Below are positions 4,776 to 64,000 of a stretch of 64,000 bases of DNA, piece by piece (position 1 is the stretch's first letter; every line of letters begins with the position of its first letter). The notes under the pieces were generated by a model. That model had not been told where the DNA came from. It was given only the letters and a program-made list of their open reading frames with translations, and ran no database searches. The position numbers and the translations under genes were made by a program. The stretch lies in contig NC_068986.1 in the NCBI RefSeq assembly GCF_001194135.2, forward strand, positions 81,612,834 to 81,676,833, read 5' to 3'. This DNA comes from Octopus bimaculoides. Its lineage: Eukaryota.

Positions 4776-5479
4776 NNNNNNNNNNNNNNNNNNNNNNNNN
4801 NNNNNNNNNNNNNNNNNNNNNNNNNNNNNNNNNNNNNNNNNNNNNNNNNNNNNNNNNNNNNNNNNNNNNNNNNNNNNNNNNNNNNNNNNNNNNNNNNNNN
4901 NNNNNNNNNNNNNNNNNNNNNNNNNNNNNNNNNNNNNNNNNNNNNNNNNNNNNNNNNNNNNNNNNNNNNNNNNNNNNNNNNNNNNNNNNNNNNNNNNNNN
5001 NNNNNNNNNNNNNNNNNNNNNNNNNNNNNNNNNNNNNNNNNNNNNNNNNNNNNNNNNNNNNNNNNNNNNNNNNNNNNNNNNNNNNNNNNNNNNNNNNNNN
5101 NNNNNNNNNNNNNNNNNNNNNNNNNNNNNNNNNNNNNNNNNNNNNNNNNNNNNNNNNNNNNNNNNNNNNNNNNNNNNNNNNNNNNNNNNNNNNNNNNNNN
5201 NNNNNNNNNNNNNNNNNNNNNNNNNNNNNNNNNNNNNNNNNNNNNNNNNNNNNNNNNNNNNNNNNNNNNNNNNNNNNNNNNNNNNNNNNNNNNNNNNNNN
5301 NNNNNNNNNNNNNNNNNNNNNNNNNNNNNNNNNNNNNNNNNNNNNNNNNNNNNNNNNNNNNNNNNNNNNNNNNNNNNNNNNNNNNNNNNNNNNNNNNNNN
5401 NNNNNNNNNNNNNNNNNNNNNNNNNNNNNNNNNNNNNNNNNNNNNNNNNNNNNNNNNNNNNNNNNNNNNNNNNNNNNNN
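4776..5479. other. Assembly gap (N run); other gaps at 19781-19790, 39088-39453 and 43610-43722
   Basis: Runs of N, mostly bounded by (CA)n or telomere-like repeats. Confidence 0.99.
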
Positions 5480-9369: not shown

Positions 9370-9620
9370 ATAAGAGTATTGGATTTGGTAGACGGAAACT
9401 GAAAGAAGCCCATCATATATATATATGCTTGTGTGTCTGTGTTTGTCCCCACCACCATCACTTGACAACCGATGTTGGTGTGTCTACGTCCCCGTAACTT
9501 AGCAGTTTGGCAAAAGAATAAGTACTAGGCCAATAGGATAAGTACTAGGCTTCCAAAGAATAAGTTCTGGGGTCGATTTGTTCGACTAAAGGCGGTGCTC
9601 CAGCATGGCCACAGTCAAAG
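9370..9620 (+). mobile_element. Family B SINE, 3' part
   Basis: GGATTTGGTAGACGGAAACTGAAAGAAGCCC...GGGGTCGATTTGTTCGACTAAAGGCGGTGCTCCAGCATGGCC is the reverse complement of the copy at 13955-14335. Confidence 0.8.
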
Positions 9621-13940: not shown

Positions 13941-13954
13941 TATTATTAATTTAT

Positions 13955-14335
13955 TTATTTTATTTTACTTGTTTCAGTCATTTGACTGCGGCCATGCTGG
14001 AGCACCGCCTTTAGTCGAGCAAATCGACCCCAGGACTTATTCTTTGTAAGCCTAGTACTTATTCTATCGGTTTCTTTTGCCGAACCGCTAAGTGACGGGG
14101 ACATAAACACACCAGCATCGGTTGTCATGCAATGTTGGGGGGACAAACACACACACACACAGACACACATATACATATATACGACAGGCTTCTTTCAGTT
14201 TCCGTCTACCAAATCCACTCACAAGGCTTTGGTTGGCCTGAGGCTATAGTAGAAGACACTTGCCCAAGGTGCCACACAGTAGGAATGAACCCAGAACCAT
14301 GTGGTTGGTAAGCAAGCTACTTACCACACAGTATT
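13955..14335 (-). mobile_element. Near full-length family B tRNA-derived SINE
   Basis: Minus strand: CTGTGTGGTAAGTAGCTTGCTTACCAACCACATGGTTCTGGGTTCATTCC (A/B-box-like head), CCTTGGGCAAGTGTCTTCTACTATAGCC central block, internal (TG)n, AT-rich tail. Confidence 0.85.
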
Positions 14336-15337
14336 ATTATTATCATTATTGTTGTTGTTGTTGTTTTTATGTCACTGAGACAGTAGTTTTTTTTTTGTGC
14401 TGCTACACCTTACCAGTAATATCTGCTGTGTCTTCTGTGTTTTGTATTAACTGCAATCAGTTCTTGTGAACTAAAGTACCCCTCCCCAGTACTTTGGTGA
14501 ATTTATATAAGTGTGTGATGTGGCAGGTAAATGGCAGAATTGCTAGCTTGTTTGATCAAACTTGCAGTCTTTGGTTTTGTCTTCATATTTAGAATTCAAA
14601 TCCTGCTATAAAATTAGCATTGGGATTGATATATTGTAGGAAACAATATCTCAGCTTTTATTGACAACTGAAATCGATCCGGTACTTACTGTGTTATAGA
14701 ATTTCTCTTAATGCTGCCATGTTAATTACAACTGTCAGTACTTCTGTAAACTGGTACCAACTATAGGATTCTACATTTTGTAATAATTTCGCTTGGGTTT
14801 AACGTGTCGTGCTCATCAGTGCAAGGGAGACTACTGATACTGATCTCATTTTAAATGTTAAAATCTAGTATGTCTTGGGTTTTCTTCTTTACTCATCTCC
14901 TGTCTTTTTCCATTTCATTTCAATCCTACCTTATTATTCTGTGCTCGCAATATTAAACTAAATATTAATTTTTTTCATTTTAATCTCATTCACGAATTAT
15001 TTTGTGATCGACAATGTTTCCAATAAAGTTTTGAAGCCAGAAATTTTTTTTCATTTATAACAAACATCCGATGTAATTATGTCCCGTTATTAAGAATTGT
15101 CTCATTGGTTTTAAAAATATTTAATCGTTTTCAACAACCAAGTGTAGTGGGAAAATGTAACTTTCATAAAAACAAAAGTTTTCATAAGGTTTTATGACTC
15201 CAAGTATTAGATAGAATCTCAGGACTACAACACTTGTTATTTCGTAATTAGAGTAAGGACAGATATTCCTATGTGTAAATTTGTGGTAAGTTTCCAGTTT
15301 TAAATGTTCCTGTTGGGCCACAAATGTTAAGCTATTT

Positions 15338-15445
15338 CAGAAAGTTTCCATCTGTGTCACCGATTGGAAGGTTTCCACCTATGTCACCATTTGGAAGGTT
15401 TCCACTTGTGTCACCATTCAGAAAGTTATGACTTGTGTCACCAGT
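15338..15445. repeat. Four-copy 27-bp tandem repeat (consensus about TGGAAGGTTTCCACTTGTGTCACCATT)
   Basis: Units at 15338, 15365, 15392 and 15419, each exactly 27 nt, with substitutions but no indels. Confidence 0.9.
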
Positions 15446-16422
15446 CAAAGTTTACAAATTGATAAATTTCTTTTGATTTGTCCCAGATTTTCTTTAAGTC
15501 AATATTATTTTTCCCAGCTACATCTATACGTGGGTGAATATACATTTTGTGGTACTGCAGTTTGGCTTTCTTCAAGCCCACTCTGATATTACTTTTTGAC
15601 AAACTTCTCACATTGTTTAATGAAGCTAGTGATGTGATATTTTGCTTCCTGAACATTCTATAGATATTTCCACTACAATTAATCTATAATGGTTAACTTA
15701 CCTATTGAACAAATTTATCCCAGAAATTGGGTGACTGAATTAAAGAAAACAAAAATTCTCCCTTCTCATTTTGAGTAGATTTAAACAGAGTTGACTCTCT
15801 ATTCAGTGATACTGACAGTAGCGAGGGTATTGAGTGACTCTGGAGCGATGTTAATGAAATGGTTTGGCTTTCTGTATGATTTACATAATGATGCCACTTC
15901 ATATTTATAACAAAAGTGTATGTGGTACAGGAGGTTATAGAATTATATAGGAGTGTGTAAGTGTATAAGGTTGTGTGACAATGGGAGAAAAGTGTGGTCC
16001 TGATATATTTCCAGGTTGTGTAATGACGAAGGCTATGTAGTACTGATATATCATAACTGGATGTATCATACTGATTATTGAAACAGCTACATTAGGGGTG
16101 TGTATAAACCCTGTAATTAGCCTACATATCTTTTTAAAATATTCATGAAAAAGACTATATGAAATCTATTCTTGATGATTTTATAAAATTATGGGGTAGT
16201 GTAAAAAAAAAATTATAGAATTATATGTAAAATTTTTTTGAAAATTGATAAAAATTTATCCCAAAGAGAGAAGGAAAAAGAAATTTGTAAATGTAAGGGA
16301 GGTAACTTCAGTTATATTAAAAGATAAGCTATTCCATAACCGTCGGTGTGATCTTGTCCACACTTCACGGCTGTTAATATATTAAACAACTCACTAACCA
16401 GGGGTTAATCTTGTGACAGCAT

Positions 16423-18210: not shown

Positions 18211-19947
18211 ATATTATTAATTCTGGTGAGATATTTCACTTAACCAAGATATTTTTATATTTAACTTAATTAGGTAATGAAATATGTACATATTACAAAT
18301 ATGTACATAAACGTGGGTCTACATAAAAAAACCCCCCACCCCATATGCTCTGTAAAGTGGTTGGTATTAGGAAAGGCATCCAGCCATAGAAACCACTAGA
18401 ACTTGGCACAATCCTCTGTATGAATGTATGTTTTATGTATGTATGTAAAAATGTATCATAAACTGGTGGTAGATAGTGACTGTGTGAAATATTGGCATAG
18501 GATAATTTGGGAGGTTAGGTTAGACTTTACAATAACTAAAATGTTACTTAATTCTGACACTAATGTAGAATATTCCAACTTATACCAATGTAGGAAAGCA
18601 ACTATTAAACCAATGATAATGATGATGATTAATATAAAGTTATTATCAACTCTGCTAACTACATGAAGCATCTCACTCCTTCAAAAGAAGTGATATTACC
18701 TCCATAGATATAAAAAATATAGAGATTATATAATAATTGTAATTAAAACATATTCAGCTTACTTAAGAACCAAATTTTTAAACATGTTTATTTTTTCAAT
18801 ATGTGATGCTTTATTCTGTTTGTATTTATATTTCTGCTTTTATCTCAGTAAATGATTGTTTGAGAAGATATTGTCTTCAGAGATTAGCTGGTTCTCTTAT
18901 ATGTATTAATTATTAATAAAGTTGTTTTAATAAATTATTATCATAATTTGTTATAAGGATTAACTAAATCCATCTGTCTCTGAAAGTAATCTTAGAATTA
19001 TTGTAGCATTAAAAATAGAAATTGTTTTTTTTTACATTGCTGTGTTTCAAAATATGGATTATTTCATTAGAACTTAGATATTCTATCATTACTCTCTAAT
19101 TCCTTTCATGCTGTGTTTTAAACACACTTCCTTCCTATATTTGTTTGGATAAACTTTGACCGTTTACATATTCTTGATTTATATTTCCATAAGAAAATAT
19201 TAATTCCCTTTAGGTTCTAAAGAGTCTTTAATCTTGACTAATTCCTAACGACATGCAAAGCTATATTTCCCCCGATCAATAATATTTGATTTGTCCCTGA
19301 TAACATTTATTCTGAATCCTGTCTTTGTCTGTCTTAAGATATGTATTCTGATCAGTACTATTCTGCTGTATCTTTCAAACCCTCTCTCTGTGTTTGCCAA
19401 TTGTTTTATCTGTTTTCCACCTTTTATGAAAATCTATATCTAAATTTTGCAACATTTCTACACTTCATCTTTTATTTTTTTTTGTATTCTCAAATTATGA
19501 TAATCAGAATTACATCAAACGGACCATATGTATAGATACTGGTGGCTGTACTCAGTCTATGAGCTTAAGCCATTATATTCTTCTAAGACATTCCAGCCTT
19601 ACCATGTATTTGAACTTCAGACATATGAGCAGCTAGCTGGACAGCTAATCTACAATAAATTCTGATCTATATTTTAGAGATGAGGATTTCTGTACATTGG
19701 ATGGATGTGTCCTCATCTTGTTTGTTGTTACCACAACATTTCGGCTGATTTACTCTCCAGTTCTCATTCGTATTTTTTTTNNNNNNNNNNTCCAGTTCTC
19801 ATTCGTATTTTTTTTTTTTTTTGCTGATGTTATTATTTATTCAAGGCACTGCCTGGAATTGAACTCATTAAGTGCGTGAGTTAGTAGCCCACGCACTTAA
19901 CCATTACACTATATGCACATGGGCAATTATAGAGTGAATTTTAGGGC

Positions 19948-20523
19948 TTATAAACCTAATATTTTTATATCCTTTCTTAATACTGGTTCCCTTATTCTAC
20001 TCATATCTGCTCTAGGTTTGCTTAGGAGGTTGTTGTGTCCTAGCATATGTGCTGCCTCTTTTAGTTTATGTATTTTCCAGTGGTGTTCTCTGTCTATTAT
20101 TTTAACTTTATCCCACTGGGGAAAGTAGTCACCGCTTTTCCATGCATGATCTATACCTGGTTTTTCAGCATCTCCTTGTGTCACAGCTTTATGATGTTCC
20201 TCTACCCTTATTTTGAGTGGGCGGCACGTTCCCAACTTACCATAACTGCATAGGATGGAGTACACACAGTCTTTGGTCATATTCTCTTCTATTGGTGGTT
20301 TTACTTGAAGGAGATATTTGCGAAGTGTTGTATTACTCTTGAATACCATCCTGATATCATAAGGACTGCATACCTTTTGTATTTTTTCCAAGAGGCTTTT
20401 CATATAGGGTAAACAGACTGTGGTAAGTTTATGGGTTTCATCCTCTCTCCTCTTTCTAATTGGAGTGGATAGTATGTTTTTTGGGTAGTTGTTGCTTAAT
20501 AGATTGTTACTTAGCTTGATCAT
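19948..20523 (-). pseudogene. Penelope GIY-YIG endonuclease region (degenerate)
   Basis: LPYMKSLLEKIQKVCSPYDIRMVFKSNTTLRKYL...CVYSILCSYGKL-GTCRPLKIRVEEH...WDKVKIIDRE...KLKEAAH. The second 'YIG' motif appears deleted, so it is inferred to be inactive. Confidence 0.85.
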
Positions 20524-21349
20524 TTCTTCATGGTATGTATCAGGATCGCTACTTATATTCTTTGCTTGATGTTTTAGGCACTGAGCAATCTGATTCTTTA
20601 CACTGTATGGATGGTGGGAATTGAAGTTGAGGTATCGTCCAGTGACGGTTGGCTTGCAGTATACGAATGTCCTGTTATTAATACATCCAGGAACGCTAGC
20701 TGTTAGTCTTTTTCCTTTTCCATTGTGAACTGTATGGCTGGCTTTATTGAGTTGACATGATCTAGCAGTACTTGGACATCTTCTTGGTGGAGCTATAGTA
20801 TAAAGGTGTCATCAATGTATTAAAGCTATAGGGTTGGTTTTAGTGGTGTTGATCCTAAAGCCAAATTCTCAAAGTATTCCATGTATATATTGGCTATTAT
20901 CGGTGATAATGGCAAACCCATAGCTAAACCCTCATCCTGTCAATATATCTCAGTACCTTCTCTGAAGTAGGTAGTTTCTACACAGAAAGTCAACATTTCC
21001 ATCGAGTTCCCTATTGGTATACTAGTGCGATCTTTTAGATAGGTGTCCATCACTAGTTTTTCTTGAATCACTGATAGTGCTTCATCAGTTAGGATTTTGG
21101 TGAACAGACTATCACATATAGACTTACCATCTGGTTGGATCCAATAGGGATATCCTTGATCAATTCTGTGAAATGGGTGGAATGGGGGTATGCCCATGGG
21201 CATATAGCATAATGGTTAAGAGCGTGGGCTACTAACTCCAAGATTGTGAGTTCAATTCCAGGCAGGGCCTTGAATAAATAATAATAATAATATCAGCAAA
21301 AAGTACTTTAGGAATGAGAACCTAGGGTTGGGTTCAAAATTCTACTAGG

Positions 21350-23769: not shown

Positions 23770-24790
23770 GTGATGAATTTAGTATGAAGATAGGAATTAA
23801 TTAAGGCTCAGTCCTCTCCTTTTTATCATAGTCCTACAAGTCATCACAGAGGAGTTTAAGACATGGGAATTACTATATGCTGATGATCTAGTTCTCATAG
23901 CTAGATCTATAGGGGACTTAGAGAGGAAATTTCGAGTATGGAAGCCAAACCTAGAATCAAGAGGTCTTAAGGTGAAATTTGTAAAGACAAAGGTTTTAGT
24001 AAGTAGGAAAGAAGACAGGAATCTTGGATCTTCAGCATCATGCTTGATATACAGGAAAAAAGTAAGTATAACCACCATATGCTGTATACAATGTAAACTA
24101 TGGACACACAAGAGATGTAGTAGAATCACAGGCAGATTAACAGAGAAAGTAAGCTTTGTATGTAACAGTTGCACTGTAGCAGTACATAATATGAACACAC
24201 CAGAAATAGATTCTCTTAAATGCCCAGATAGCTCACTAGAAGTCAATAGCTTTTGTTATCTAAGGTATGTAATTAGTAGAGGAGGTAATTGTTCCAAAAG
24301 TATAGTAAGAGCTGGTTGGAAAAAGTTCAGGGACCTTCTACTGCTGTTGGTAACAAACTTTTTCTCATTCAGAGACTGGAAAATTGTATGATGCTTCTGT
24401 TAACTGCAATGCTGCATGGTTGTGAGACATAGGCCTTGAATGCAGAGGACTTAGCAAGCCTGGAGAGAAATGAAGCAAGTGTGCATGAATGGCACAGTAC
24501 AAGTATGCTGAAAGAAAAACTAAGCACAAGAAGAATCAGATGTAGTGTGCAAGAAAGAAGACTTGCTGGTTTAGTCATGTGGTGTGTTTGGATGAGGACA
24601 TTTGTATAAAGAAGTACTGACCACTTTAATGGAGCTTGTAGAAGAGGAAGACGTGAAGACCTAGGAAGATATGACACATGTTGAAGGCTGATTTTAGGAC
24701 CTTGAACATCAAGGAAGAGATAAGGGACTGGAATGAATGGTAATATGTAGTTCTTGAGAAGACCCATACAGTTTGATGAAAGTAAGTTCT
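23770..24790 (+). mobile_element. RTE LINE, RT C-terminal half to 3' end
   Basis: Open frame from 23807: LSPLLFIIVLQVITEEFKTWELLYADDLVLIARSIGDLERKFRVWKPNLESRGLKVKFVKTKVL... with YADD at 23876-23887; it continues through ORF 23972-24391, then decays. Confidence 0.92.
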
Positions 24791-27350: not shown

Positions 27351-29059
27351 ATGCATATGATTTTCTATGTTCAGTGATTATCAAGAAATAGCCATCACTA
27401 TGCAAATAAAAGACTGCACAGGCTTCAAAGCCTTGGCTGAAAGCAAATGATGTTCAGCTTTAATTTCCTTATGTATATTGGATTTCGAAAACTATATGTA
27501 GTTCTATAATCTAACTGTATATAATTAATTGAATTGCAACTGCAGACATGGCTGTGTGTCTATAGAATTTACTTTGTTACCATGTGATCTTGAAACCTAT
27601 CTCACTGCCTGCTATGTTGGGCAAGTGTCTTCTGTAGCCTTGGACTGACCAATGCCTTGTGTATGAAATTTGCAGATGGAATTTGTGTGGAAACCTGTTG
27701 CATGTATATGTATAATATATCATCATCATCATCATTATGTTCATTTAATGTCCACTTTTTCATGTTTGCATGGGTTAGATGGGAATTTGTTGAGGCAGAT
27801 TTTCTGTCACTATATGCATTTCCTGTCTCTAACCCTTAACTTTTTGCATGCAAGTTACAATTTCGCCATGAATGACTGGAAACTAACAAACACAGCACAA
27901 CACAAACTCGCAAGTACATACATGATGGGCTTCCTTCTGTTTCTGTCTACCAAATGCACTCACAAAACTTTGGTTGACTTTGGGGCTATAGTAGAAGACA
28001 CCAGCTCAAGGTATCGCACAGTGGAACTGACTCTGAGGACCAAATCATCCCATAGCTCTGAGTTGAAAAAAAATACTTAACTGGAAAAACGGGTAAGGGT
28101 TAGTAACACGAAAAGCATCTGGTTATAAAACAGTACCTCAATACATATTTATCTAATTCTTTTTAGTATGGAAAAATGTATGTAAAACCTGAAGGAACAA
28201 ACAGAATTGTCTACCATTTCAACTATTTAAAATGTTATCCCTTACATAGAAATTATGAAAACATGTACAGGTTGTAATAAACATTGTTTCAATGGCTATA
28301 TGTATGTAAAACAGAATTGATGAAACTTATATTACAGGTGCTTAGAGAAAAAATTTATTGACAACAAGGTGGATATTGAAATTATATATTCAAATTTGAT
28401 TTTCATTAGTTTAATGTTTTGTTTTAGAATGTACTTTCAGTTACTTTATTATAAGGATGACTACTTAAAAATAAAAGTTGTGAATGATGGAATACTTTAT
28501 TTGCATTGTTAGGCAGATATTCTCATCCTACATTTTGGGGCATTGTTAAATGGTTCAGTTTTCTAGAGAACATTCTTTGAAAAGGACAGCAACATGCTTA
28601 CATTAAACTTTGAGGAAAAGAAATGAAGGAATATGCCGAGTCCTTAGTTATAAATTTGTCCTATGCTGTCCAGATTATTTTGTCAAATGTTATGGTTATT
28701 TATTCACGTTGGGTTTGAATTAATCATGCATTATCTTTTAGCTTTGAAATTTCAATGATGTGACTGTACATTTTTAGAATGATGTTGTAGGGTATATGTG
28801 TGAGACCAGACCTGGCCAGTTTGAACATAAAACAGATTGAATATGTTGAGCCTGATATGGCCAGTTTAAATGCTAAAGGGCATTAAAACAAGTTCCATAC
28901 AAGAGGTGTATCGTGCTGCTAAAGAAAAAAGGGAGTTGGGAACCTGTATCCAACAAAATCATCACAGTGCCACTCATAACTTGTCACAGTTCAAGCCAAG
29001 TCAACAGTACTTCAGGTCTACATGTCAATAAAGGGTGTTGATGATGAAATGAAAGGGCG

Positions 29060-29275
29060 ATGAGCTGGCAGAAACGTTAGCACGCCGGGCGTAACGCTTA
29101 GTGGCATTTTGTCTGTCTTTATGTTCTGAGTTCAAACTCTGCCGAGGTCAACTCTGCCTTTCATCCTTTCAGGGTCGATTAAATAAGTACCATTTGCGTA
29201 CAGGGGTCAATCTAATCGACAGGCCCCCCCCCCTCCACCCAAATTTCGGGCCTTGTGCCTAGAGTAGAAAAGAAA
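29060..29275 (+). mobile_element. Family A SINE, well preserved
   Basis: GAGCTGGCAGAAACGTTAGCACGCCGGGCG...GAGTTCAAACTCTGCCGAGGTC...CGGGCCTTGTGCCTAGAGTAGAAAAG; CpGs retained. Confidence 0.85.
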
Positions 29276-39087: not shown

Positions 39088-39453
39088 NNNNNNNNNNNNN
39101 NNNNNNNNNNNNNNNNNNNNNNNNNNNNNNNNNNNNNNNNNNNNNNNNNNNNNNNNNNNNNNNNNNNNNNNNNNNNNNNNNNNNNNNNNNNNNNNNNNNN
39201 NNNNNNNNNNNNNNNNNNNNNNNNNNNNNNNNNNNNNNNNNNNNNNNNNNNNNNNNNNNNNNNNNNNNNNNNNNNNNNNNNNNNNNNNNNNNNNNNNNNN
39301 NNNNNNNNNNNNNNNNNNNNNNNNNNNNNNNNNNNNNNNNNNNNNNNNNNNNNNNNNNNNNNNNNNNNNNNNNNNNNNNNNNNNNNNNNNNNNNNNNNNN
39401 NNNNNNNNNNNNNNNNNNNNNNNNNNNNNNNNNNNNNNNNNNNNNNNNNNNNN

Positions 39454-40628: not shown

Positions 40629-40845
40629 AAAGTGTTGAGTTGGCAGAATTGTTAGTGCGCTGAATGAAATGCTCAGTGGTATTTTGCCTGTCACTACATT
40701 CTGAGTTCAAATTCTGCCAAGGTTGACCTTACCTTTCATCCTTTAAGAGTCCATAAAATAAGTACCAGTTGAACTGGGGTTGATGTAATCAACTCATCTC
40801 CTCCCACAAAATTACTGCCCTTGTGGCCAAATTTGAAACCATTAT
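40628..40845 (+). mobile_element. Family A SINE preceded by (CAT)n(GTT)n; further copies at about 39660-39995, 47075-47310 (+) and 12355-12490, 52930-53120 (-)
   Basis: Shared TGGCAGAAT...GAGTTCAAATTCTGCCAAGGTTGAC...AAGTACCAGTTGA...GCCCTTGTG motifs. Confidence 0.8.
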
Positions 40846-43193
40846 TATTGTAGAAGAATGACTTGATCTGCTGTTGTGTTCATATGTGGTAGTTGTCATC
40901 GTTTAGCCCCAGGTTAGCTCCAAATAAGTAAACCTATCATCATCATCATCATCTATTTTCCATGCTGCACTGCATTGGATGGCTTGGCAGGAACTGGTGA
41001 GGCCAGGGGCTGCACCAGGTTCCATAGCCTGTTTTGGTTTGGTTTCCGCAGCTGGATGCCTTTCTTAACACCAACCGCTATGCAGAGCATACTAGGTGCT
41101 TTATATGTGATACTGTCACCAATGCTTTTTATATGGCACCATCAAAGGTATTTCAACTATGAGCATGCTGTTTTTCATATATATCCAAGACTAGGTAATA
41201 TGATATTTCCTTAATTTCACAAAGTGACAGTGTGATTTAAGGAAAATTTGGCTATTATTTCTAGCAGAGCAAGCAGCTATGTAGAGGCACCCTCATTGGC
41301 TAGAATATTGTTTTGAAAACTGACAAATAGTGTCAGTAATGGGTTGACTTCTGATAGTTGTGTGTCAACTGACATGCACTCTTGCTTTCAGTAACTTTCT
41401 CTGCTTCTTTATTTCATAAATATTCGTTAGAAATGGAGAAGAAAATGACTTCTCACCCCCGGTAGCAGAAAATGACATCTTTTAAGAAATCTTAAGCAGA
41501 CATTTATAAATAAAATCTAATTTGTGAGTTTATTAAATACAAGAATATTGATAATTCTTCTCTCAGTGTTTATTGAATCTGGCAAATAGTTTTCATTAAG
41601 CACACTATTTATTTTACAGGTGGTCAATACTGTGTTTTGAAAATTATTAGCAATAATTCAAGAGTTGTTTTTTTCTTTTGTGTGTGTGTATTTTCCTCTC
41701 TTTGACTAAGTATATATTTTTTTCATATCATCTATAATATTCACAGCATTTTAATTATTGATCATGCAGTGTTTCTCTCCCAATACTGACACCTTTCTTT
41801 TACAAACGAATGATAATTGTTTGAAATTTGAGCTGAAATATTTAAATTTAACAGTTCATATTAATTCTATTTGAAAACAAGTTCTTTCGTTGTACAGTTT
41901 CTCTGGATATTTTGTAAAAAAAGACAAAAAAAAAAATGAAATGTGTTTTCTGTGGCACTGGCTCCTAGTCTCTGATGAAAAGCATAAAGATTTTTTTCTT
42001 AACTAAATGAGTTAACTGTATTGTTCCTAGAAACTAACGACAATAGTCATCATTTCTAATACATTAGTTTTGCTTCAGGTAATTACTTTTTTTCTAATTA
42101 GATTCTAAGGCATGACAAATGCATTGTTGTTCTCATTTTTGTTTAAACTCCGCTGTTTGATATTTGGTTATAGCATTGTCTGAAATAGTAGTATACCTAT
42201 TGTTGTAGTCATGATGCCTACCAATTTAGTTTTTTACAATCTGTACTCATTCAATATGGATTTCAAAACAATAATGAAAACTTTCCTCTCTGTTTTCTAC
42301 AAAACTGTTCTATTAAAATGTTTTTAGTCTTGAAAATGAGTTTATTAATTATAGATTATTATTTATTTTTTTGGTGCTGCTGTTTGCATTGGCTAAACAT
42401 AGTTACTGAAATTTGGTATTGATGATCTGTAATGTATAATTAGTTGTGCTGTGTTTAAACTGATGCACATTGAGGTGGATTACAATTAGCTGGCACAATG
42501 TATTTTGAAACAGTCAATTGTGTAACTGTAGCCAGGCAAAACAAACTGATTCTGATTAGATCAGTTCAACTGGACATAATGCTAATGAGACTGACTGACC
42601 TAGAGCTGTAAGTTAAGGTGGTCTGTTGGTGTAACATTCACGGAACAGGAGATTTTAGAAACTTCTTCCATGCACTGTTTTCAAATTCCATGTCTGTGAA
42701 CAGACACCTAAATGGAAAGTATGTAGTATGTTTGATCCTAATAATTACTACTATGGCCAACAATATAAAAAGTAGGGAGTCTTTGGTTATATGAGTATGG
42801 TATTTTTAATACCAAAGGTATATTATTTGGATACATGTGTTGTTTTTTAGTCTACAATTATAAATGTGAAATTCTGTCTGTCCCATCTGTCCTGGACCCC
42901 TGCATCTCAATCTATATTTGCTCTACATAGTCATATCATACCTTTTTGGAATCAAGAGGATCCCAGGGTTGAAAATCTGCTCTTCATTTGGTACTTGAAC
43001 ATCCAGCATTGGGATCAGGTCTGGATGAGGATGTTATATGCTAACAGTTGAAAATTTAAATTTTAAATGAACAAAAATTTGTGAACTTATAAGTTTTTTA
43101 TTTAAACTGAATTTAAAGTAATACCATATTGGTTGGGTACCAATAAATGCTTTATTATTATTGCTCTCTTTAGTTTTGGGCCACAAGCCCAAT

Positions 43194-44119
43194 GGATCTT
43201 TGTGATTTGACAGGCAACATTTTTTTATGTAGTGTTTTTGGTACCGAAACACTTTCAAACTTCAAATACTTGTATATTTTGTGTTATAGAACAGATAAAA
43301 AATTTTGTATTCGAAGTTATTTCATGTAAAAAATTGTCGTATTTCGGTAATTTCAACCAATCACTGACGTCTATTGAGGTGAAAACAATTATGCCGTGGA
43401 ATATAAACAACGGTGTTACGGGATTTTTTCCCTTGAATAAAATTAGTGCCGTTGTTTGTCAACAAAAACTATCCGCTGTCAACAACAACTATCAGTGGTA
43501 TATTTTTCGTTTGTCACTGTTATTTATGACATCGTTCGTGCGTTTGTACTGGTTTTAGCTTTAGGGTTTTAGGGTTCGGGTTTTAGAGTTAGGGTTAGTT
43601 TTAGGATTANNNNNNNNNNNNNNNNNNNNNNNNNNNNNNNNNNNNNNNNNNNNNNNNNNNNNNNNNNNNNNNNNNNNNNNNNNNNNNNNNNNNNNNNNNN
43701 NNNNNNNNNNNNNNNNNNNNNNACCATAACCCTAACCCTAAAACCCTAACCCTAAAACCCAAACCCTAACCCTAAAACCCAAACCCTAACCCTAAAACCC
43801 TAACCCTAAAACCCAAACCCTAACCCTAAAACCCAAACCCTAACCCTAAAACCCTACTCGGGAATAATGATTATAATTAAACAGGGAATAACACACTTGA
43901 CACTGAACAGCACTAACTGTATTCAGCTGAATAGACGTTAGTGATTGGTTGAAATTACAGAAATACGACAACTTTAACATGAAATAACTTGCGATGTACA
44001 ATTTTTTGTTAAGAAGGTTAAGAGAAGAAGTTGTTTTATATGACACATTCTACCAGTGTCCCAAGTTTGAAAGTGTTTCGTTAAGAAAACAAGTGTTGCC
44101 CGTCAAATCACAAAGATCC
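43194..44119. mobile_element. Non-autonomous TIR (foldback/MITE-like) element with 7-bp TSD and internal convergent telomere-like arrays
   Basis: GCCCAAT direct repeat at 43187-43193 and 44120-44126. TIRs GGATCTTTGTGATTTGAC(A/G)GGCAACA match 25/26, with imperfect inverted homology for about 190 bp. Core is TTAGGG variants (43548-43609), an N gap, then CCCTAA/CCCTAAAA/CCCAAA array (43723-43856). Confidence 0.88.
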
Positions 44120-45269
44120 GCCCAATTAGCCCTGCACAGGAGCTAGCTTAAAAGTTTGCAAAGAGTGCAGCTTTTAAGCTAGTATTGTATGAAATCCTTA
44201 TGATTGACTAGCCTTTCACTTAGATCAGAGATGAGTTATCCCTCACTCTCCTTTAACTTGGTCAAGAGGTGGAAACTTTTTATCCACAGGTAAACTTTCA
44301 CTCTTGTTCTGTTTTGAAATCATCTGCTGAATGGTCATTAAATATCTGTTAAATATCTATGAATTTATATTTTTCTCACTGCAGATATATCAACGCACTT
44401 TCAATTCCTTCCTGGTACTAAAGTGTTTTAGTTAACTCCTGTCTTTGACCAATGGCAGGAGTATGGATTGGAGATGTATTTTTTTATATCAATGTATTTC
44501 TTTTTAACATCTACCTCCAAAAATGATCTTTTGTTTATCTTATTGTAACAAGAAATAGGAAGAAGAACCATAAGTTGGTACCACTTGCCGTGACAAAAAG
44601 AAGTAGTTTTGTATTTTTTAATATGGTCACGACAATGTTTATGCATGACGAAGCTTTGCATTCATGATCTGTCAGTTATAATACAATAGAAATTTTCTAG
44701 AATTAGCATTTGAGCTAACTTCTGGCATGAGACTCAATTTAAAATGATATTATAATAACCACTTCAGCTACATTTTATAGCAGATTGTTTTAGATTGACA
44801 TGTGGCTCTCGGTTTTTAAATGTTTAATGAAATTCTAGATAAGCCTGCAGCAGTAAGGTGACAGTGTGGAGACATCTTATTTGGTTCAGTAGATATTGAG
44901 TACTTAATGTAAATGATCTTCCACTGTGACACAAGATGTAATCTCAATATTTCACTTATTTATGAAGGGTAGTTTTTGTGCTCTTATTCAGTAATTTAAA
45001 AAAATTTATTTCCAAGATTTTCTGTTTTTATTAAAAAAAATTTTTTTTAAATAAATAAGTCAAGAGCCGCACATTTGATTTTTACAGATCTCCCAAACTG
45101 GCTGATGATTAGTCAGCACATCAGTGGGTCAATGTCTTTGGGTGAGATGTGTATGAACGGGGAACAAGGATTATGAGTGGCATCTTGAGCAGAATAAGCT
45201 CTACTAAAGATGCCACCCTAGAATCACTATCCAACCATACACAAAAAAAGACAAACCAAAAAAATTAAT

Positions 45270-55087: not shown

Positions 55088-55500
55088 AGGGTGTGGTTGT
55101 AGGGTAAGAAATTTGCTTACCAATCACATGGTTCTGGGTTCAGGTCTACTGTGTGGCACCTTAGGTAAGTGTCTTCTGCTATAGCCCTGGGCAGACCAAA
55201 GCCTTGTGAGTGAATTTGATTTGGTAGATAGAACCTGGAGGAAGCCAGTTGTATACATATATGAATATATATCTGTGTGTGTATGTATTTGTGTTTGCCT
55301 TCCACTACCACTTGACAACTAGAGTTGGTTTGTTTATGTCCCTGTAACTTAGCAATTCATCAACAAAGACTGATAGAATAAGTACAACTAAAAAAAAAAA
55401 AATGCATTCTGGAATTTATTTGTATGACTAAAACCCTTCAAAATGGTCCCCAGCATGGCTGTTGTAGTCCAGTGAAAGAAACAAGTAAAAGATAAAAGGA
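55088..55500 (+). mobile_element. Near full-length family B SINE
   Basis: GTGTGGTTGTAGGGTAAGAAATTTGCTTACCAATCACATGGTTCTGGGTTCAGGTC...AAACAAGTAAAAGATAAAAG is the reverse complement of the 13955 copy. Confidence 0.82.
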
Positions 55501-56899: not shown

Positions 56900-57420
56900 T
56901 AGCAGCAACAATGGTGGTGGTTTTACCGTTTTCATGGTTGTGGCTTTTTCAATCAGATTCCGAGACTGCTGCTGCCGCCGCCGCCGCTGCTTATTCACCA
57001 ACATAATTTGGTTTGGCTCCTTTCATTCACCGCACATCCACAACTCTCTAACACAGACACACTAACTCTTCCCCCCTCTCTCTCTCTCTCTTACACATTG
57101 ACGTTCTCATTTCTCTCTCTCTCACACACTCGCGCGCGCGCGCACACACAATATTCAGAAACTGAGCGATTTCACGTGTTTCACTCACCAAATCGGTTAT
57201 TGAAAGAACGCGAGGGTGAGAGTGAATTGTTTGACTGAAGGTCCACGTGTGCTCAGTACAATATCTCTGTTCACTGTCCATTGTGGTCAAGCAGAAAGTG
57301 ACCTCTTTGAAGTTTATTAGCTGACCATGTTCAGCTGGACCCTGACGCTTGGTAGTTAAAGGCTGCCGTCGCCGCCACCACCACCACTGCTACTGCTATT
57401 GTTGCTGCTGCTAGTGCAGA
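56900..57420 (+). promoter_or_regulatory. Candidate promoter / 5' UTR of the gene starting at 57728
   Basis: CpG-rich relative to the window; (CT)n-(CG)6-(CA)n tract at about 57070-57150; two CACGTG E-boxes (57173-57178, 57244-57249); (GCC)n/(ACC)n runs; lies directly upstream of the coding exon. Confidence 0.55.
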
Positions 57421-57727
57421 TGCTACTGTGAACAACAGCTACTACAGAGGCACTACTATTACTACTATTACAAGTATTATTGTAGTAAGAACTAACTATA
57501 AAGAAAAAGACAGACGAAGAAGTAGAGAACACGGGACGTCAGTTGCTGGGAAGTGGAAGACTTCATCCCCATCGTGGCTGCTTCTATTATTCCAGATTGG
57601 TTGGTCCTTAATACCAAACACAATAGGTTGATTAATTGTAAGGGAGCGGTGGTGTGGCAGTGTTATAACAGCCCTATCTACTGGCAGCGATACTGCAACA
57701 CACGGCTGACCCTTGCAGCGCTTGGGA

Positions 57728-57982
57728 ATGGGCAATCAGCTGAAAAAAATTCGGGAACTTGGAGGAGATGCTGTTCGAAGAAGTGGTCTTACCAAGGGAG
57801 ATTCTACGGATAAACAGGATGAAGGGAAAGAGCAGGATGGGGCTTCTTCTGCAATGGTTCACCAATCATCAGTTGATGTACCGTCAACTACAGAGGAATT
57901 AACAGACGGTCGACAATCTTATACCAGTGCAGTGGATGTTACCATTGAGAATAGTGGACAGGATGTGGACAACACTGACCAG
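57728..57982 (+). CDS. First coding exon of a host gene (85 aa: MGNQLKKIRELGGDAVRRSGLTKGDSTDKQDEGKEQDGASSAMVHQSSVDVPSTTEELTDGRQSYTSAVDVTIENSGQDVDNTDQ); product unidentified; acidic, likely disordered N-terminus
   Basis: GGAATGG start context (G at -3 and +4); 255-nt open frame with protein-like composition and higher GC; ends at CAG|GTATTT donor (phase 0), after which composition changes to (CA)-rich intron-like sequence. No convincing phase-0 exon 2 found before 64000. Confidence 0.8.
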
Positions 57983-59934
57983 GTATTTCATACACATGTG
58001 CCTATTCACACACTCATACGCATACGCATCGCTGCAGGTTTTCTACTTCGTGTTTATTTATGTCCCCTTCGGTAAAAGGAAGAGAGAAGCCCCTAAGGGT
58101 CAGTGAGTTGATTACCACAGAAATATGGGAGGAAGGGGGATGAGAAGCGGGTAGAACTCTTTCAAGTAACTTGAATGGCTGTTGTCACTATGACATCATC
58201 CACTTTCATCTGGCAAACAATAACAACAACAGCAATATTGTTTAAATAACTTTTCCTGTTATTGTTCCATACGATGTCCTCTATTTACATACAGTCTGTA
58301 ATAACTGTGGGTGACCAGCAGTCAGTCTGTCGCCAACAACAATAATAATATTCTGCTCATCTCTCAATACAATAAATATTTTTACACGACTTAACTAAAA
58401 CTGCTACACGTTATATATACATTCATATATACACACCTATACATAGTTGTATTCATACAAATACGCCTTCGTATAGTGTGTGTATGTGTGCGTGCGCGCA
58501 CATATAGCTATCTAACTTATATTTACACACACACATATCTTCAAATCTTAACACAATAACTATTGTGTATGTTTACTCACTCACATATCTGATCCTAGTC
58601 ACCCACCCACATTACTAGGTGGAGAACAGTGAATAGTGGGATAGTTGGTGGTGGTGATGAAAGAATCCGTGAATGATTCATTAGCAGCGGTGTTACTTGT
58701 AGGATCAACATTAAAGGCGTGGGTACTTTGAGTATCGGGAGTATTTGGTAGTTATGTCAACATTATTCATTGCTGACATACCTGTCATATTCACGGCTTC
58801 AACATTCCATAGTTTTGTAAATCACACACACACACCAACAACAACCACCACCACCACAGCCATATGTCAGCATCGTATAGTGTTTTTCACTATCTTACAT
58901 GTGTGTTTGTATACAAATGTGCGTGTTTATACTGTACGGATATGTATGTATACTGTATAAATGTGCGTGTGTATATATACTGTACAAATGTGTGTATGAA
59001 ATTGTGCGCGCGAGTTTATGCTGCGAAACTGTTTATATTGTATAAGCATGTATGTTTGTGTGTTTATTGTGCAAATGTGTATGATTAAACAGTACAAGTA
59101 TGTATGTATTTATAAAATGCAGGTAAGTGTATATTGTGCAGTATGCAACATATAATTACACACACACCTCTGCAGGTGTGTGTATATATGTGAGGTAGCC
59201 ATGTCTGGAAGTAAGGTTCTTCTCATTTCCAACCCATCATTACATAGACAACCATTTGATATCTACATTGTTTTGACTCACCTCTTAGCTTCTTCAACGA
59301 ACTTCACCTGTAATTAATCTCTTAACTGTTCAAGAAAAATATATTTAACTGATTCATAGAAATGGCAGTAACATTTTCTATTTCTCTTCGTCTCTTAACT
59401 CAGTTTTATCACAACAACAACAACCTCTATATCAAGAGCAACAGTAATCTCCTTCAAAGCAACAGCAACATTATCCAATCAACGCCACCACCACCACCAC
59501 CTCCACATTCACAACAGTGACTATCCTTATCATTAATTCCTCCATCATCACACCACAACTGCAATAACCACCCAGTCATCTCTAGCTACCCCTATAACAT
59601 CAACACCAGCATCAATAAGATCATTAAGATCAATGCAGTTTCTGTTACTGGATCAGTTTTCAAGTGATTTCAATGACAATCTCTTGAGTTCTTATATTTC
59701 AGTTACTGTTGAGAATATTTGTAATGTCATTCATTAATCTCTTCTTGTTCTCTATTCTAACCACCCCTACCTCTGTCTGCCCATCTGTCCGTCTCTCCCT
59801 CTCTCTATTTTTTTTAGCCACTCTACACTTCTCTATTTCTCTCGCTGTAAATAGACAGAGCTCTAAGAGCTCCCCACCAGAAAAAAACAAAAAACAAAAA
59901 CAAACAAAATAATACAAAGGTATGTAAAAGAAAC

Positions 59935-61509: not shown

Positions 61510-64000
61510 GTCGAATTGTTGGAGCAATGGTAAAAATTCTGTGCAGTATTTATTCTGGCTTTACATTCTGAGTTCAAGTGCCATCATGGTCAACTTTGCT
61601 TTCTATCCTTTTGGGGTCAATAAAATTAACACCAGTTGAGCACTGGGGTTGATGTATTTGACTAGCCCCCAGATTTCAGACCTTGTGCCTATAATAGAAA
61701 GGATTATTGGCAAGCTGGCAGACTCATTAGCACGCTGGGTGAAATGCTTAGAGGTATTTCGTCTGCCGTCACTTTCTGAGTTCAAATTCTGCTGAGCTCA
61801 ACTTTGCCTTTCATCCTTTTCAGGCGTTGTGCCTACAGTAGAAAAGATTATTATTTTTATTATGTAGTTTTATTTTTATTGCTTACTTTCAATTTACTTC
61901 AAACAACAGTTCTGTATACTTTGTATGTAATCAATGTATTTTCTGTTGCATTGACATTACATAATGTGTATGTGTGGTACCTAGTGGTGTTGCTTTCTAG
62001 ATGTGTATATTTCTAAGTCTTGGAATTTTGGTTATACATGCACCTTCATCTTTTTTAATCATTGCCAAGGTACCCTTTTAATATAGGGATTGTTTCTGTT
62101 TTCACAGTTCACACTCAGTTTACAAGATATTCATGTTTGAATAATTTCTCCATTTCCTTTAGAGATATATTATTGTCTGTTAGGATAGACACTTTGATTA
62201 GGAGGTACTTCCTTTCCTAGTGGTTCTTCGCAACAATGTCAGGTGCATTAGCCTTGCTCTTTCTTTTTGTGTGGGTTTATATCTTAAGAATATGGCTACT
62301 TTGTCATTTTATGAGATCTTTTTTATATTGCCTCTTTTCTCTTCGTATTTCATAATGCTGACATAATTTGAAATATATAGCTATTATTATTGTTGTTATC
62401 ATTACTTTTGGTTAACAGAATCACTAGATCATCAAACAAAATGCCTTATGGTATTTTTTCTGACTCTTTATGGTCCCTCAGTAGTCAGTAAAATAAAGCA
62501 CCAGTCTAGTACCGGAGTCAATGAAATTGACTTGGTCACCTCCCCACACAGCTGAAATTGCTGGCCTCATGCCTAAATTAAAAACTATTATCAAAATGAT
62601 TTGGAGTTTCTAGCAACACACATTTTTATGAACCTCTGAGTGTTTAAAAAATTATTGTACTTTTAATACGATTTTTTGTTGTGTTTGGGTGAAGTTGTTA
62701 CATCGAGAAGTGAAAAGTATTTCCTTTACATTTTGAAACAAATATATTTTTGCCATCAGACAATTTTGATAATATCTGTAAGCTTGGACTGAGGCAGCAG
62801 TAGTAACAGTAGCAGTAATAGTAGCAGTAGAAGAATGCTCCCACTACAGCGGTAGCAATATATATGCCCTTCTACAAATTTAACATTAAAAAAGGGATAA
62901 AATGATATTTGAACAAAAGGAATCGTGGGCTATTTGTTGGCTCCATGGTGGCAGTATGTCACAAGGGAGTGTCTCCTGGCCTAAAAATTTCATCCAGGGC
63001 TAGGAAAAAAGTGATGAGAGATTTTCCTCTGCTTTTCATAAAATGGGGAAGTGGGAGGTACCATCAAATGTTCTTTAGGGCCTTTGGAAACCTCCATCTA
63101 AATTTTTATGTTACTGTGTGTCCATCACTTCACTATATCTCTTGTAATTCCTTTGTATGACTGAATGGACTCTTGTGGAAAAATATGGGATAATAATAAT
63201 GATTTGTGATTCATACACAAGGGCAGCAGTTTTGAGGGAAGGGGTTAGTTGATTATATTAAAGTACTTGACCAGTACTCTCTTTTAATCCCGAAAGGATG
63301 AAAGGCAAAGTTAACCTCAATGTCATTTGAACACAGAACATAAAAGGCTGGAACAAATGCCACAAGATATTCTCTTTGACTCTAACAACGATAACAATAT
63401 TAATAGTCCTTTTTACTAAAGGCACAAGGCCTGAAATTTTGGGGGTTAGGGTAAGTTGATTACATTGACCCTGTGTTTCACTGGTACTTAATTTATCAAC
63501 CCCGAAAAGATGAAAAGCAAAATCAACCTAGGTGGAATTTGAACTCAGAATGTAGAGACAGATGAAATGCTGCTAAGCATTTTGCTTGGCATGCTAACGA
63601 TTCCTCCAGTTCACCACCTTAAGCAATGATAATAATAATAATGATAATAATAATGATGATGATGATGATGATTAGGCAACAGAGTAAATAGTATTGTTAA
63701 AGTGTCAAACAAAATAACATGCACTGTTTGTTTTCGTTCTTTATGTTCTGGTTTCAAATACTACTGAGGCCTTTCATTTTTACAGAATTGTTATGATAAA
63801 AAATACATGTCATGTACTGAGGATTCACATTGACTAACTCCTTTTAAAACTGCTGGCTTTGTGCCTGAATTAGAAACCATAATTATTATTATTATTGCTG
63901 GTAGAATTGTTAGCTAGTTGGATATAATACCTCATAGCATTTCTGAAGACACATTATGCATCAAGTTTGAATCCCACTAAGGTCAAGTTTGCTTTTCATC
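61510..64000. mobile_element. Cluster of family A SINEs in both orientations: + at about 61510-61705, 61707-61855, 62410-62590, 63895-64000; - at about 63200-63345, 63360-63625
   Basis: Family A motifs and their reverse complements (GGCACAAGGCCTGAAATTT...CTGGTACTT...GAATTTGAACTCAGAA). Confidence 0.8.

What the first reader, a model, noticed from the sequence alone, without database searches (positions are those of the whole stretch)
43187..44126. Transposon carrying head-to-head telomere-like arrays that mimics a telomere-telomere fusion
Seen: G-rich TTAGGG variants run inward from the left arm and C-rich CCCTAA variants from the right, the 5'-(TTAGGG)n-(CCCTAA)n-3' geometry of end-to-end fusions. 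However, the whole is bounded by 26-bp TIRs (25/26), about 190 bp of diverged inverted homology and an exact 7-bp TSD (GCCCAAT). The right array has higher-order structure alternating 14-bp (CCCTAACCCTAAAA) and 20-bp (CCCAAACCCTAACCCTAAAA) units. The arms are CpG-rich, suggesting youth. GG-initiated TIRs with a 7-bp TSD do not fit the common superfamilies neatly (from general knowledge). Inference: a DNA-transposon family that distributes interstitial telomere-like, G-quadruplex-competent palindromes, which could bind telomere proteins, seed telomere addition at breaks, or be misread as fusion scars in the heavily rearranged coleoid karyotype.
Basis: partly seen in the sequence, partly recalled or inferred. 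Interest (0 to 1): 0.82.

Follow-up and report, generated by a model that had tools for sequence, protein, structure and literature searches.

The report
Foldback transposon with telomere-like inner repeats
This is one insertion of a small non-coding cut-and-paste DNA transposon, built as a long imperfect palindrome with telomere-like mini-repeats at its centre; it looks like a chromosome-fusion scar but is not one, and it is a fairly ordinary kind of mobile element.

Summary
An exact 7-bp direct repeat (GCCCAAT) flanks 26-bp terminal inverted repeats (25/26). Inside these are about 200-240 bp of diverged inverted arms. At the centre, G-rich TTAGGG-like units on the left face C-rich CCCTAA-like units on the right, across a 113-N gap.

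All telomere-like dimers in the 64-kb window lie inside this element. The arms are CpG-rich (o/e 0.8-1.5, against 0.24 for the window).

A small correction: the right array is a 54-bp higher-order unit (14+20+20), 100% identical over 2.4 copies. It is not a strict 14/20 alternation.

The termini and target-site duplication rule out a telomere fusion. The architecture is that of foldback-type elements such as Galileo and Tetris: long, internally repetitive inverted arms, copies made of two arms only, and unequal repeat numbers per arm.

A 7-bp duplication is not an orphan. Galileo and 1360 of the P superfamily make 7-bp duplications. Every array unit also matches the loose THAP-domain consensus TXXGGGX(A/T). 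This is a lead, not proof.

No second copy, transposase partner or empty site could be found with the databases available, because none holds cephalopod DNA. Family status, superfamily and continuity across the gap therefore remain untested. Moderate interest.

The parts
43187..43193 (.). Left copy of the 7-bp target-site duplication, GCCCAAT
   Evidence: Identical to 44120-44126. It is also the right arm of a 6-bp-stem mini-palindrome in the target: TTGGGC 43176-43181 / GCCCAA 43187-43192.
43194..43219 (+). Left terminal inverted repeat, GGATCTTTGTGATTTGACAGGCAACA
   Evidence: only two matches in the window, 0 expected; the match extends to 33 nt at 91%.
43194..43391 (+). Left arm, the part with inverted homology to the right arm
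   Evidence: (E=8e-27). Weaker similarity continues to about 43430.
43296..43360 (+). Two tandem subterminal units of about 31 bp in the left arm (core AAAAAATTGT...GT[T/A]ATTTCA)
   Evidence: TRF period 31, 1.9 copies. (4-way alignment with the two right-arm units).
43330..43391 (+). Best-conserved inner block of the arms (62 nt, 89% complementary to 43914-43975). It contains CCAATCACTGACGTC.
   Evidence: 87.5% identity, against 73% in the rest of the arm.
43392..43550 (+). Left-arm segment, largely without a counterpart on the right. CpG-rich. Contains a 20-bp-spaced direct repeat TGTCAACAA[A/C]AACTATC.
43551..43609 (+). Left telomere-like array, G-rich strand on +. Degenerate 14-bp units (TTTTAGGGTTAGGG type).
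   Evidence: (period 14, 84% match).
43610..43722 (.). Assembly gap (113 N, estimated length) at the symmetry axis of the palindrome
   Evidence: Its content is unknown.
43723..43856 (+). Right telomere-like array, C-rich on +. Units of 14,14,20,20,14,20,20 bp form a 54-bp higher-order repeat at 100% identity.
   Evidence: Four canonical G4 motifs on the minus strand.
43857..43913 (-). Right-arm segment between the array and the homologous arm. Only weak similarity to the left arm.
43914..44119 (-). Right arm with inverted homology to the left arm. Includes two units of about 31 bp at 43945-44010.
44094..44119 (-). Right terminal inverted repeat. It has 1 mismatch to the left TIR, CG on the right against CA on the left.
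44120..44126 (.). Right copy of the 7-bp target-site duplication, GCCCAAT

Best explanation
A single insertion of a non-autonomous, foldback-type class II (TIR) DNA transposon, about 0.93 kb as assembled.

Shown:
- Sharp 26-bp inverted termini.
- An exact 7-bp target-site duplication.
- Long, imperfect inverted arms, each with two subterminal repeats of about 31 bp.
- Tandem arrays of a 14/20-bp telomere-like unit that run inward from both arms and meet at the centre.
- No coding capacity in what is sequenced.

Inferred mechanism:
- A transposase encoded elsewhere binds the termini and subterminal repeats, excises the element, and inserts it at a target cut with a 7-bp stagger. Repair of that stagger gives GCCCAAT on both sides.
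- The head-to-head geometry follows from the arrays being part of arms that are inverted copies of each other. No telomere biology is needed.
- The arrays then grow and shrink independently in each arm by slippage or unequal exchange. That explains a 100% homogeneous right array facing a degenerate left one.
- As in Galileo, such inner tandem repeats most likely act as extra transposase-binding sites.

Superfamily (about 0.25-0.3 probability):
- The most likely mobiliser is a P-superfamily, THAP-domain transposase.
- P is the classical superfamily that makes 7-bp duplications.
- Every array unit (TTAGGGTT, TTTGGGTT) fits the THAP consensus TXXGGGX(A/T).

The near-perfect central palindrome also explains why the assembler broke there.
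For: - TSD and TIR.
- Arm homology.
- The TIR is kept far better than the rest of the arm: 25/26 against 144/193 plus 36 gap columns, Fisher p=0.012, or p=0.0026 with the TSD included. The arms were therefore already diverged when the element last moved, and only the ends are constrained, as expected of a mobile element.
- Subterminal repeats in both arms.
- Arrays confined to the element.
- With the gap removed, the element folds into one hairpin, -175 kcal/mol, z=-17.9.
- No Pfam domain and no protein relative for the longest arm ORF in 5.8e9 or 1.84e9 proteins.
- Literature: 1360 and Galileo make 7-bp TSDs (PMC3698922).
- Literature: the foldback structure arises repeatedly in different superfamilies (PMC4079207).
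- THAP consensus from PMC10824691 and PMC3464256. There are 23 matches in the element against 1.7 expected.
Against: - Only one copy is known. No other copy was found in the window or in the metagenome, prokaryote-genome or viral collections. None of these holds cephalopod genomes, so the negative result is weak.
- No autonomous partner and no empty site were seen.
- The centre is unread.
- The THAP match is an automatic consequence of any TTAGGG-like array and of a loose motif.
- From my own recollection, unverified, P-type ends begin with CA. This element's ends begin with GG.
- Mutator-type foldback elements make 8-10-bp TSDs, so the element fits neither named foldback lineage cleanly.
Confidence: 0.75

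Rival explanations
1. The arrays were acquired secondarily. An ordinary inverted-repeat transposon broke in the middle, telomerase healed both ends, and the two healed ends were rejoined. This gives (TTAGGG)n-(CCCTAA)n inside the element. On this reading the arrays are private to this copy or a sublineage and are not a functional part of the family.
For: The geometry, with the G-strand running 5'->3' towards the centre from both sides, is exactly what two telomerase-healed ends would give when joined. TTAGGG is the only experimentally determined cephalopod telomere motif (PMC13218726).
Against: No run longer than two perfect hexamers exists. The units are 14 and 20 bp, organised in a 54-bp higher-order repeat with TTTTAGGG and TTTGGG variants. 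This is unlike fresh telomerase product. If the arrays belong to mirrored arms, this orientation has a 50% prior anyway.
Confidence: 0.1
2. Assembly artefact. The scaffold join across the 113-N gap is wrong, because halves of two different copies were joined or a false palindrome was made by the assembler.
For: The gap lies at the centre and its length is only an estimate. Palindromes and tandem arrays are classic sources of misassembly.
Against: Halves of two different copies would not share an exact 7-bp flanking duplication (about 6e-5 by chance). A false palindrome would have near-identical arms, whereas these are about 75% identical with 36 gap columns and unequal lengths.
Confidence: 0.07
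3. The gap hides a larger middle domain, possibly a transposase gene, so the element is autonomous or much longer than it appears.
For: The gap length is an estimate. Foldback elements can carry middle domains (PMC4079207).
Against: The estimate is 113 bp. Both gap edges are still inside the arrays, and the left array is at least 75 bp shorter than the right, which by itself would fill most of the gap.
Confidence: 0.05
4. A true relic of an end-to-end chromosome fusion or sister-chromatid fusion.
For: Head-to-head orientation of telomere-like repeats.
Against: The inverted similarity stops abruptly at 26-bp TIRs that are flanked by an exact 7-bp direct repeat. The flanks beyond show no inverted similarity. 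The arrays are short and are not canonical telomere.
Confidence: 0.02

Closest known systems
Galileo (also Kepler and Newton) of Drosophila, the foldback-like member of the P superfamily
   Same: 7-bp target-site duplication. Long inverted arms with internal tandem repeats. Many copies consist of two arms only. Repeat number differs between the two arms. Assemblies leave N-gaps between the arms (PMC3573991, PMC4168063, PMC3688188).
   Different: No sequence similarity was tested or expected. The host is an octopod-like mollusc. The arms are much shorter (about 0.4 kb against 0.3-1.2 kb or more). The inner repeat unit is 14/20 bp and telomere-like, against about 210 bp in Galileo. No THAP transposase has been linked to this element. 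The TSD GCCCAAT does not resemble Galileo's GTANTAC.
Foldback elements of the Mutator lineage (Drosophila FB, Tetris, nematode Tm1)
   Same: Domain layout: unique flanking domain, then tandem-repeat domain, then centre. Non-coding copies. Tandem repeats can seed satellite arrays (PMC4079207, PMC3169594).
   Different: Those make 8-10-bp duplications. This element makes 7 bp.
Tandem-repeat-containing MITEs of molluscs (pearl, DTC84). From my own knowledge plus the citation in PMC4079207.
   Same: Short non-coding mobile elements of molluscs with an internal tandem-repeat core.
   Different: Those repeats are direct, not mirrored, and not telomere-like. Several were later linked to Helitron-type elements, which lack TIRs and TSDs.
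Head-to-head interstitial telomeric sequence at a fusion point, such as human 2q13 (from my own knowledge)
   Same: 5'-(TTAGGG)n-(CCCTAA)n-3' geometry with degenerate repeats.
   Different: A fusion site has no TIRs and no TSD, and it is flanked by two subtelomeres.
Ciliate telomere-bearing transposons (Tetrahymena Tel-1, Oxytricha TBE). From my own knowledge; TBE is also named in bioRxiv 10.1101/2025.03.17.643836.
   Same: DNA transposons that carry telomeric repeats.
   Different: There the repeats sit at the outer ends. Here they sit at the inner centre.

Membership tests
Class II TIR DNA transposon, non-autonomous (MITE-like) | Terminal inverted repeats | tested here: met
   26 bp, 25/26. 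Only these two sites in the window, 0 expected.
Class II TIR DNA transposon, non-autonomous (MITE-like) | Target-site duplication directly abutting the TIRs | tested here: met
   GCCCAAT, 7/7.
Class II TIR DNA transposon, non-autonomous (MITE-like) | No transposase coding capacity | tested here: met
   No Pfam hit. No relative in 5.8e9 or 1.84e9 proteins. Caveat: 113 unread bases.
Class II TIR DNA transposon, non-autonomous (MITE-like) | Multiple dispersed copies, or an empty site proving mobility | not testable with these tools
   No copy in the window or in the metagenome, prokaryote or viral scans. No cephalopod nucleotide database is available.
Foldback-type architecture (FB, Galileo, Tetris) | Inverted arms make up most of the element | tested here: met
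   Hairpin fold z=-17.9.
Foldback-type architecture (FB, Galileo, Tetris) | Tandem sub-repeats inside the arms, inward of a unique terminal domain | tested here: met
Foldback-type architecture (FB, Galileo, Tetris) | Small or absent middle domain | tested here: inconclusive
   The centre is the 113-N gap.
P superfamily (P, 1360, Galileo) | 7- or 8-bp TSD | tested here: met
   7 bp. Literature values from PMC3698922 and PMC4168063.
P superfamily (P, 1360, Galileo) | Mobilised by a THAP-domain transposase | not testable with these tools
   No autonomous copy is available.
P superfamily (P, 1360, Galileo) | THAP-binding sites in the subterminal or repeat regions | tested here: inconclusive
   23 matches to TXXGGGX(A/T) against 1.7 expected. 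The motif is loose and any TTAGGG array matches it.
P superfamily (P, 1360, Galileo) | Terminal nucleotides like known P-type ends | not tested
   The reference TIR sequences are not in the texts held, and Marzo 2008 is not held. This element's ends begin with GG.
Mutator/Foldback superfamily | TSD of 8-10 bp, typically 9 | tested here: not met
   7 bp. Values from PMC4079207.
hAT superfamily | 8-bp TSD and YARNG-type termini (from my own knowledge) | tested here: not met
   7-bp TSD. No 8-bp register gives a match. The ends begin with GGATC.
Dada superfamily | 6-7-bp TSD and insertion into snRNA or tRNA genes (from my own knowledge) | tested here: not met
   The TSD length fits. However, no RNA gene lies in the flanks (Rfam; ARAGORN).
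Telomere-telomere fusion scar | Head-to-head arrays flanked by two former subtelomeres, without TIRs or TSD | tested here: not met
   The orientation fits. TIRs and a TSD bound the structure.
Telomerase-mediated short interstitial telomeric insertion at a repaired break | Unidirectional, near-perfect hexamer run (from my own knowledge) | tested here: not met
   The arrays are bidirectional. The longest perfect run is 12 bp, and there is a 54-bp higher-order repeat.

The most novel reading that the evidence does not exclude
Octopod genomes harbour a family of P-like, THAP-mobilised foldback transposons. Their transposase-binding arrays are telomere-repeat look-alikes, perhaps because the DNA-binding domain recognises TTAGGG-type sequence. 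On this reading the family scatters head-to-head interstitial telomere-like palindromes through the genome. These would be hairpin- or G4-prone fragile sites, possible decoys for telomere-binding proteins, and false 'fusion scars' in synteny studies.
Probability: 0.12. Interest if true: 0.65.

Novelty: new member of a known kind. Interest (0 to 1): 0.35.

Why it matters
Interstitial telomeric repeats, especially head-to-head ones, are routinely read as footprints of chromosome fusions in chromosome-scale assemblies. This locus shows that a mobile element can produce the same signature, so such sites should be checked for TIRs and TSDs before they are used as rearrangement evidence in cephalopods.

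If the family proves abundant, it would also be the first foldback-type element described in a cephalopod, as far as my searches of the paper library show. It would then be a source of hairpin-prone sites that break assemblies.

As a single copy with an unread centre, it is otherwise an ordinary non-autonomous transposon.

Tried and rejected
Searches that led nowhere:
- Other copies in the window: blastn with word size 7, and the TIR with 3 mismatches. Nothing beyond the element itself.
- A paralogous empty site for the reconstructed target in the window: none.
- The TIR (22-mer) and the conserved 29-nt arm core against metagenome contigs: 0 hits. The TIR against GTDB genomes and IMG/VR: 0 hits.
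- The longest arm ORF (108 aa), used as bait for ORFs called on other copies: 0 hits in the 5.8e9-protein search and 0 in the 1.84e9 representative library. This test has little power. The window's own ORFs are not in that collection, and the nearest unbiased ORF calls come from species only about 71% identical at a coding exon.
- The three extra loci fetched (O. sinensis and ENA ERZ21867824, 60 kb in total) hold no copy.
- Pfam on the arm ORFs: nothing.
- Rfam and tRNA scan of the flanks: nothing real. This removes the Dada-type target.
- Enclosing larger inverted repeats: none.
- Literature searches for transposons carrying telomere-like repeats gave no direct precedent. The hits on beet, pine, a slug and nematodes were irrelevant.
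- An exact-protein look-up of the Penelope-like ORF to name the host failed.

Ideas rejected:
- An 8- or 9-bp TSD register: no alignment works.
- A palindromic target-site motif: not visible at this single site.
- Dating the insertion from arm divergence: invalid, because the TIR is conserved far better than the arms.
Full report
**What is in the sequence**

- GCCCAAT occurs at 43187-43193 and again at 44120-44126.
- Directly inside these lie GGATCTTTGTGATTTGACAGGCAACA (43194-43219) and its reverse complement with one mismatch (44094-44119).
- With up to three mismatches this 26-mer occurs only at these two places in the 64-kb window; none is expected in dinucleotide shuffles.
- The terminal match can be extended to 33 nt at 91%.
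- No 8- or 9-bp register gives a direct repeat, so the duplication is 7 bp and the element begins with GG and ends with CC.

**The arms**

- Left 43194-43391 and right 43914-44119 are inverted homologues: blastn E=8e-27, 69% over 219 gapped columns.
- In a MAFFT alignment they are 74.6% identical outside gaps, with 36 gap columns. Weaker similarity runs to about 43430 / 43880.
- Each arm holds two tandem units of about 31 bp, at 43296-43360 and, reverse complemented, at 43945-44010.
- A 62-nt block is conserved at 89% and contains CCAATCACTGACGTC.
- The left arm has about 110-160 bp with no right-hand counterpart (43392-43550).
- The TIR is kept significantly better than the rest of the arm: 25/26 against 144/193, Fisher p=0.012, or p=0.0026 if the 7/7 duplication is counted.
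- The arm divergence is therefore not decay since insertion. The arms were already different when the element last moved, and only its ends are constrained. This is what a mobile element looks like. It also rules out a false palindrome made by an assembler.

**The arrays**

- On the + strand the left array (43551-43609) is G-rich. It has three degenerate 14-bp units (TRF period 14, 84% match) followed by still more degenerate sequence up to the gap.
- The right array (43723-43856) is C-rich. It parses as 14,14,20,20,14,20,20 bp, from CCCTAACCCTAAAA and CCCAAACCCTAACCCTAAAA. This is a 54-bp higher-order repeat, 100% identical over 2.4 copies. It is not a strict 14/20 alternation.
- TTAGGGTTAGGG with at most one mismatch occurs 14 times in the window, against 0.16 expected. 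All hits are in 43569-43849, with + strand hits on the left and - strand hits on the right.
- The longest perfect telomeric run is two hexamers. 63% of the right array is perfect CCCTAA.
- The repeats are thus telomere-like, not telomere. TTAGGG is the only experimentally determined cephalopod telomere motif (PMC13218726).
- Canonical G4 motifs occur only on the minus strand of the right array, and nowhere else in the window. The left array needs an 11-nt loop to qualify.
- With the gap removed, the single strand folds into one long hairpin, -175 kcal/mol, z=-17.9. Hairpin or cruciform formation therefore competes with G4 formation.

**The gap**

- The 113 N (43610-43722) lie on the symmetry axis. 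I cannot read across them.
- Three points support continuity and orientation indirectly. First, the exact 7-bp duplication and matching TIRs sit on opposite sides of the gap; halves of two different copies would share a 7-mer with probability of about 6e-5. Second, the same 14-bp repeat family abuts the gap on both sides in mirror orientation. Third, the left array is at least 75 bp shorter than the right, which would fill most of the estimated gap.
- A near-perfect central palindrome is also a known cause of such breaks. [quoted passage not shown]
- Reading frame is not an issue. The longest arm ORF (108 aa) has no Pfam domain and no relative in 5.8e9 proteins or in 1.84e9 representatives.

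**CpG**

- Window CpG o/e is 0.24. The non-array arms have 1.49 (left) and 0.79 (right), and the 1-kb flanks 0.04 and 0.23.
- Twenty CpGs in 620 bp is above the 95th percentile of same-sized windows. It is matched only by two island-like stretches at 14.6-16.4 kb and 56.9-58.4 kb.
- Together with the perfect duplication this fits a fairly recent insertion, or an unmethylated one. The only TIR mismatch is CG against CA. One copy cannot be dated.

**Host**

- The species was not identified.
- A Penelope-like remnant (19658-21183) is 78% identical at DNA level over 1.57 kb to Octopus sinensis chromosome CM016859.1.
- Six or more short interspersed repeats of the window recur in that 20-kb O. sinensis locus at 75-90% identity.
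- The host is therefore an octopod or close to one. This supports 'coleoid' without naming the species.

**What it is**

- TIRs plus a TSD make it an insertion of a class II DNA transposon, not a fusion scar. Beyond the TIRs there is no inverted similarity.
- The layout runs from a unique terminal domain, through tandem repeats further in, to mirrored arms that meet at or near the centre, with no coding capacity. This is the foldback architecture described for FB, Galileo and Tetris (PMC4079207, PMC3573991).
- The literature also documents copies made of two arms only, different repeat numbers in the two arms, and experimentally shown secondary transposase (THAP) binding sites in Galileo's tandem repeats (PMC3573991, PMC3688188).
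- The head-to-head geometry therefore needs no telomere biology. If a one-directional array belongs to an arm, the mirrored arm carries it in the opposite sense.

**Superfamily**

In fact 7 bp is what Galileo and 1360 of the P superfamily make, while P itself makes 8 bp (PMC3698922, PMC4168063).
- Mutator-type foldbacks make 8-10 bp (PMC4079207), so that lineage fails the test. hAT (8 bp) also fails.
- Dada (6-7 bp, from my own knowledge) fails because no snRNA or tRNA gene lies in the flanks.
- THAP domains recognise TXXGGGX(A/T) (PMC10824691, PMC3464256). TTAGGGTT and TTTGGGTT both fit, giving 23 matches in the element against 1.7 expected.
- That is a suggestive link between the TSD length and the nature of the repeats. 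The motif is loose, however, and any telomere-like array satisfies it.
- I rate a P-like mobiliser at about 0.25-0.3. The general statement 'non-autonomous foldback-type TIR transposon' I rate at about 0.75.

**What could not be done**

- No tool here searches cephalopod DNA.
- All substitute searches were negative but have low power.
- Literature searches found no description of a DNA transposon with inner head-to-head telomere-like arrays. This is absence of evidence in a partial library.

**Verdict**

It overreaches on function and on the claim that the element is unclassifiable.
- It is a new member of a known kind, the foldback-type non-autonomous elements. Its practical lesson is that head-to-head interstitial telomere-like repeats should be checked for TIRs and TSDs before being read as fusion scars.
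- Interest is moderate, 0.35.

Noticed in passing
window 19658-21183 (-), ORF 19948-20523: Remnant of a Penelope-like retroelement with a GIY-YIG-type C-terminal ORF. It is 64% identical at protein level to Octopus sinensis LOC118763458, and 78% identical at DNA level over 1.57 kb to O. sinensis CM016859.1. Pfam itself gave no hit.
   Followed up: partly
window 9380-9619, 13949-14315, 29056-29220, 40637-40846, 55113-55492, 63423-63620: Short interspersed repeats, SINE-like in size. They recur several times at 75-90% identity in a single 20-kb Octopus sinensis locus (L004). This is the best evidence here that the host is an octopod.
   Followed up: partly
window 57728-57943 (+), within the CpG-rich stretch 56900-58400: Probable first coding exon beginning MGNQLKKIREL, a possible N-myristoylation start. 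Only the ORF part is conserved (75% DNA, 71% protein) in contigs of three public sequencing runs: ERR14857104, ERR14857105 and SRR29271487. The transposon lies about 13.6 kb upstream of it.
   Followed up: partly
window 14600-16400: A second CpG-rich stretch (o/e up to 0.85, against 0.24 for the window) with no ORF of note. It ends in a (CA)n-rich region.
   Followed up: no
window 23972-24391 (+): ORF with a PHD-finger-like Cys/His pattern (Pfam PHD E=2.6e-4, below the gathering score). Probably part of a decayed retroelement.
   Followed up: no
window 4776-5479 and 39088-39453: Both larger assembly gaps are bordered by (TG/CA)n microsatellite. As with the gap in the palindrome, the assembly breaks at simple or self-complementary repeats.
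   Followed up: no
window 43176-43192 and 44143-44182: The target site is itself a mini-palindrome, TTGGGC-CACAA-GCCCAA, whose right arm became the TSD. A perfect 12-bp-stem hairpin (CTAGCTTAAAAG ... CTTTTAAGCTAG) lies 17 bp to the right of the insertion. Whether the transposase prefers hairpin-prone targets cannot be judged from one site.
   Followed up: no
window 43362-43380 and 43925-43943: The best-conserved stretch of both arms contains CCAATCACT[G/A]ACGTC. It resembles a CCAAT box next to a CRE half-site. It may be a transposase-binding site or a promoter-like module; untested.
   Followed up: no
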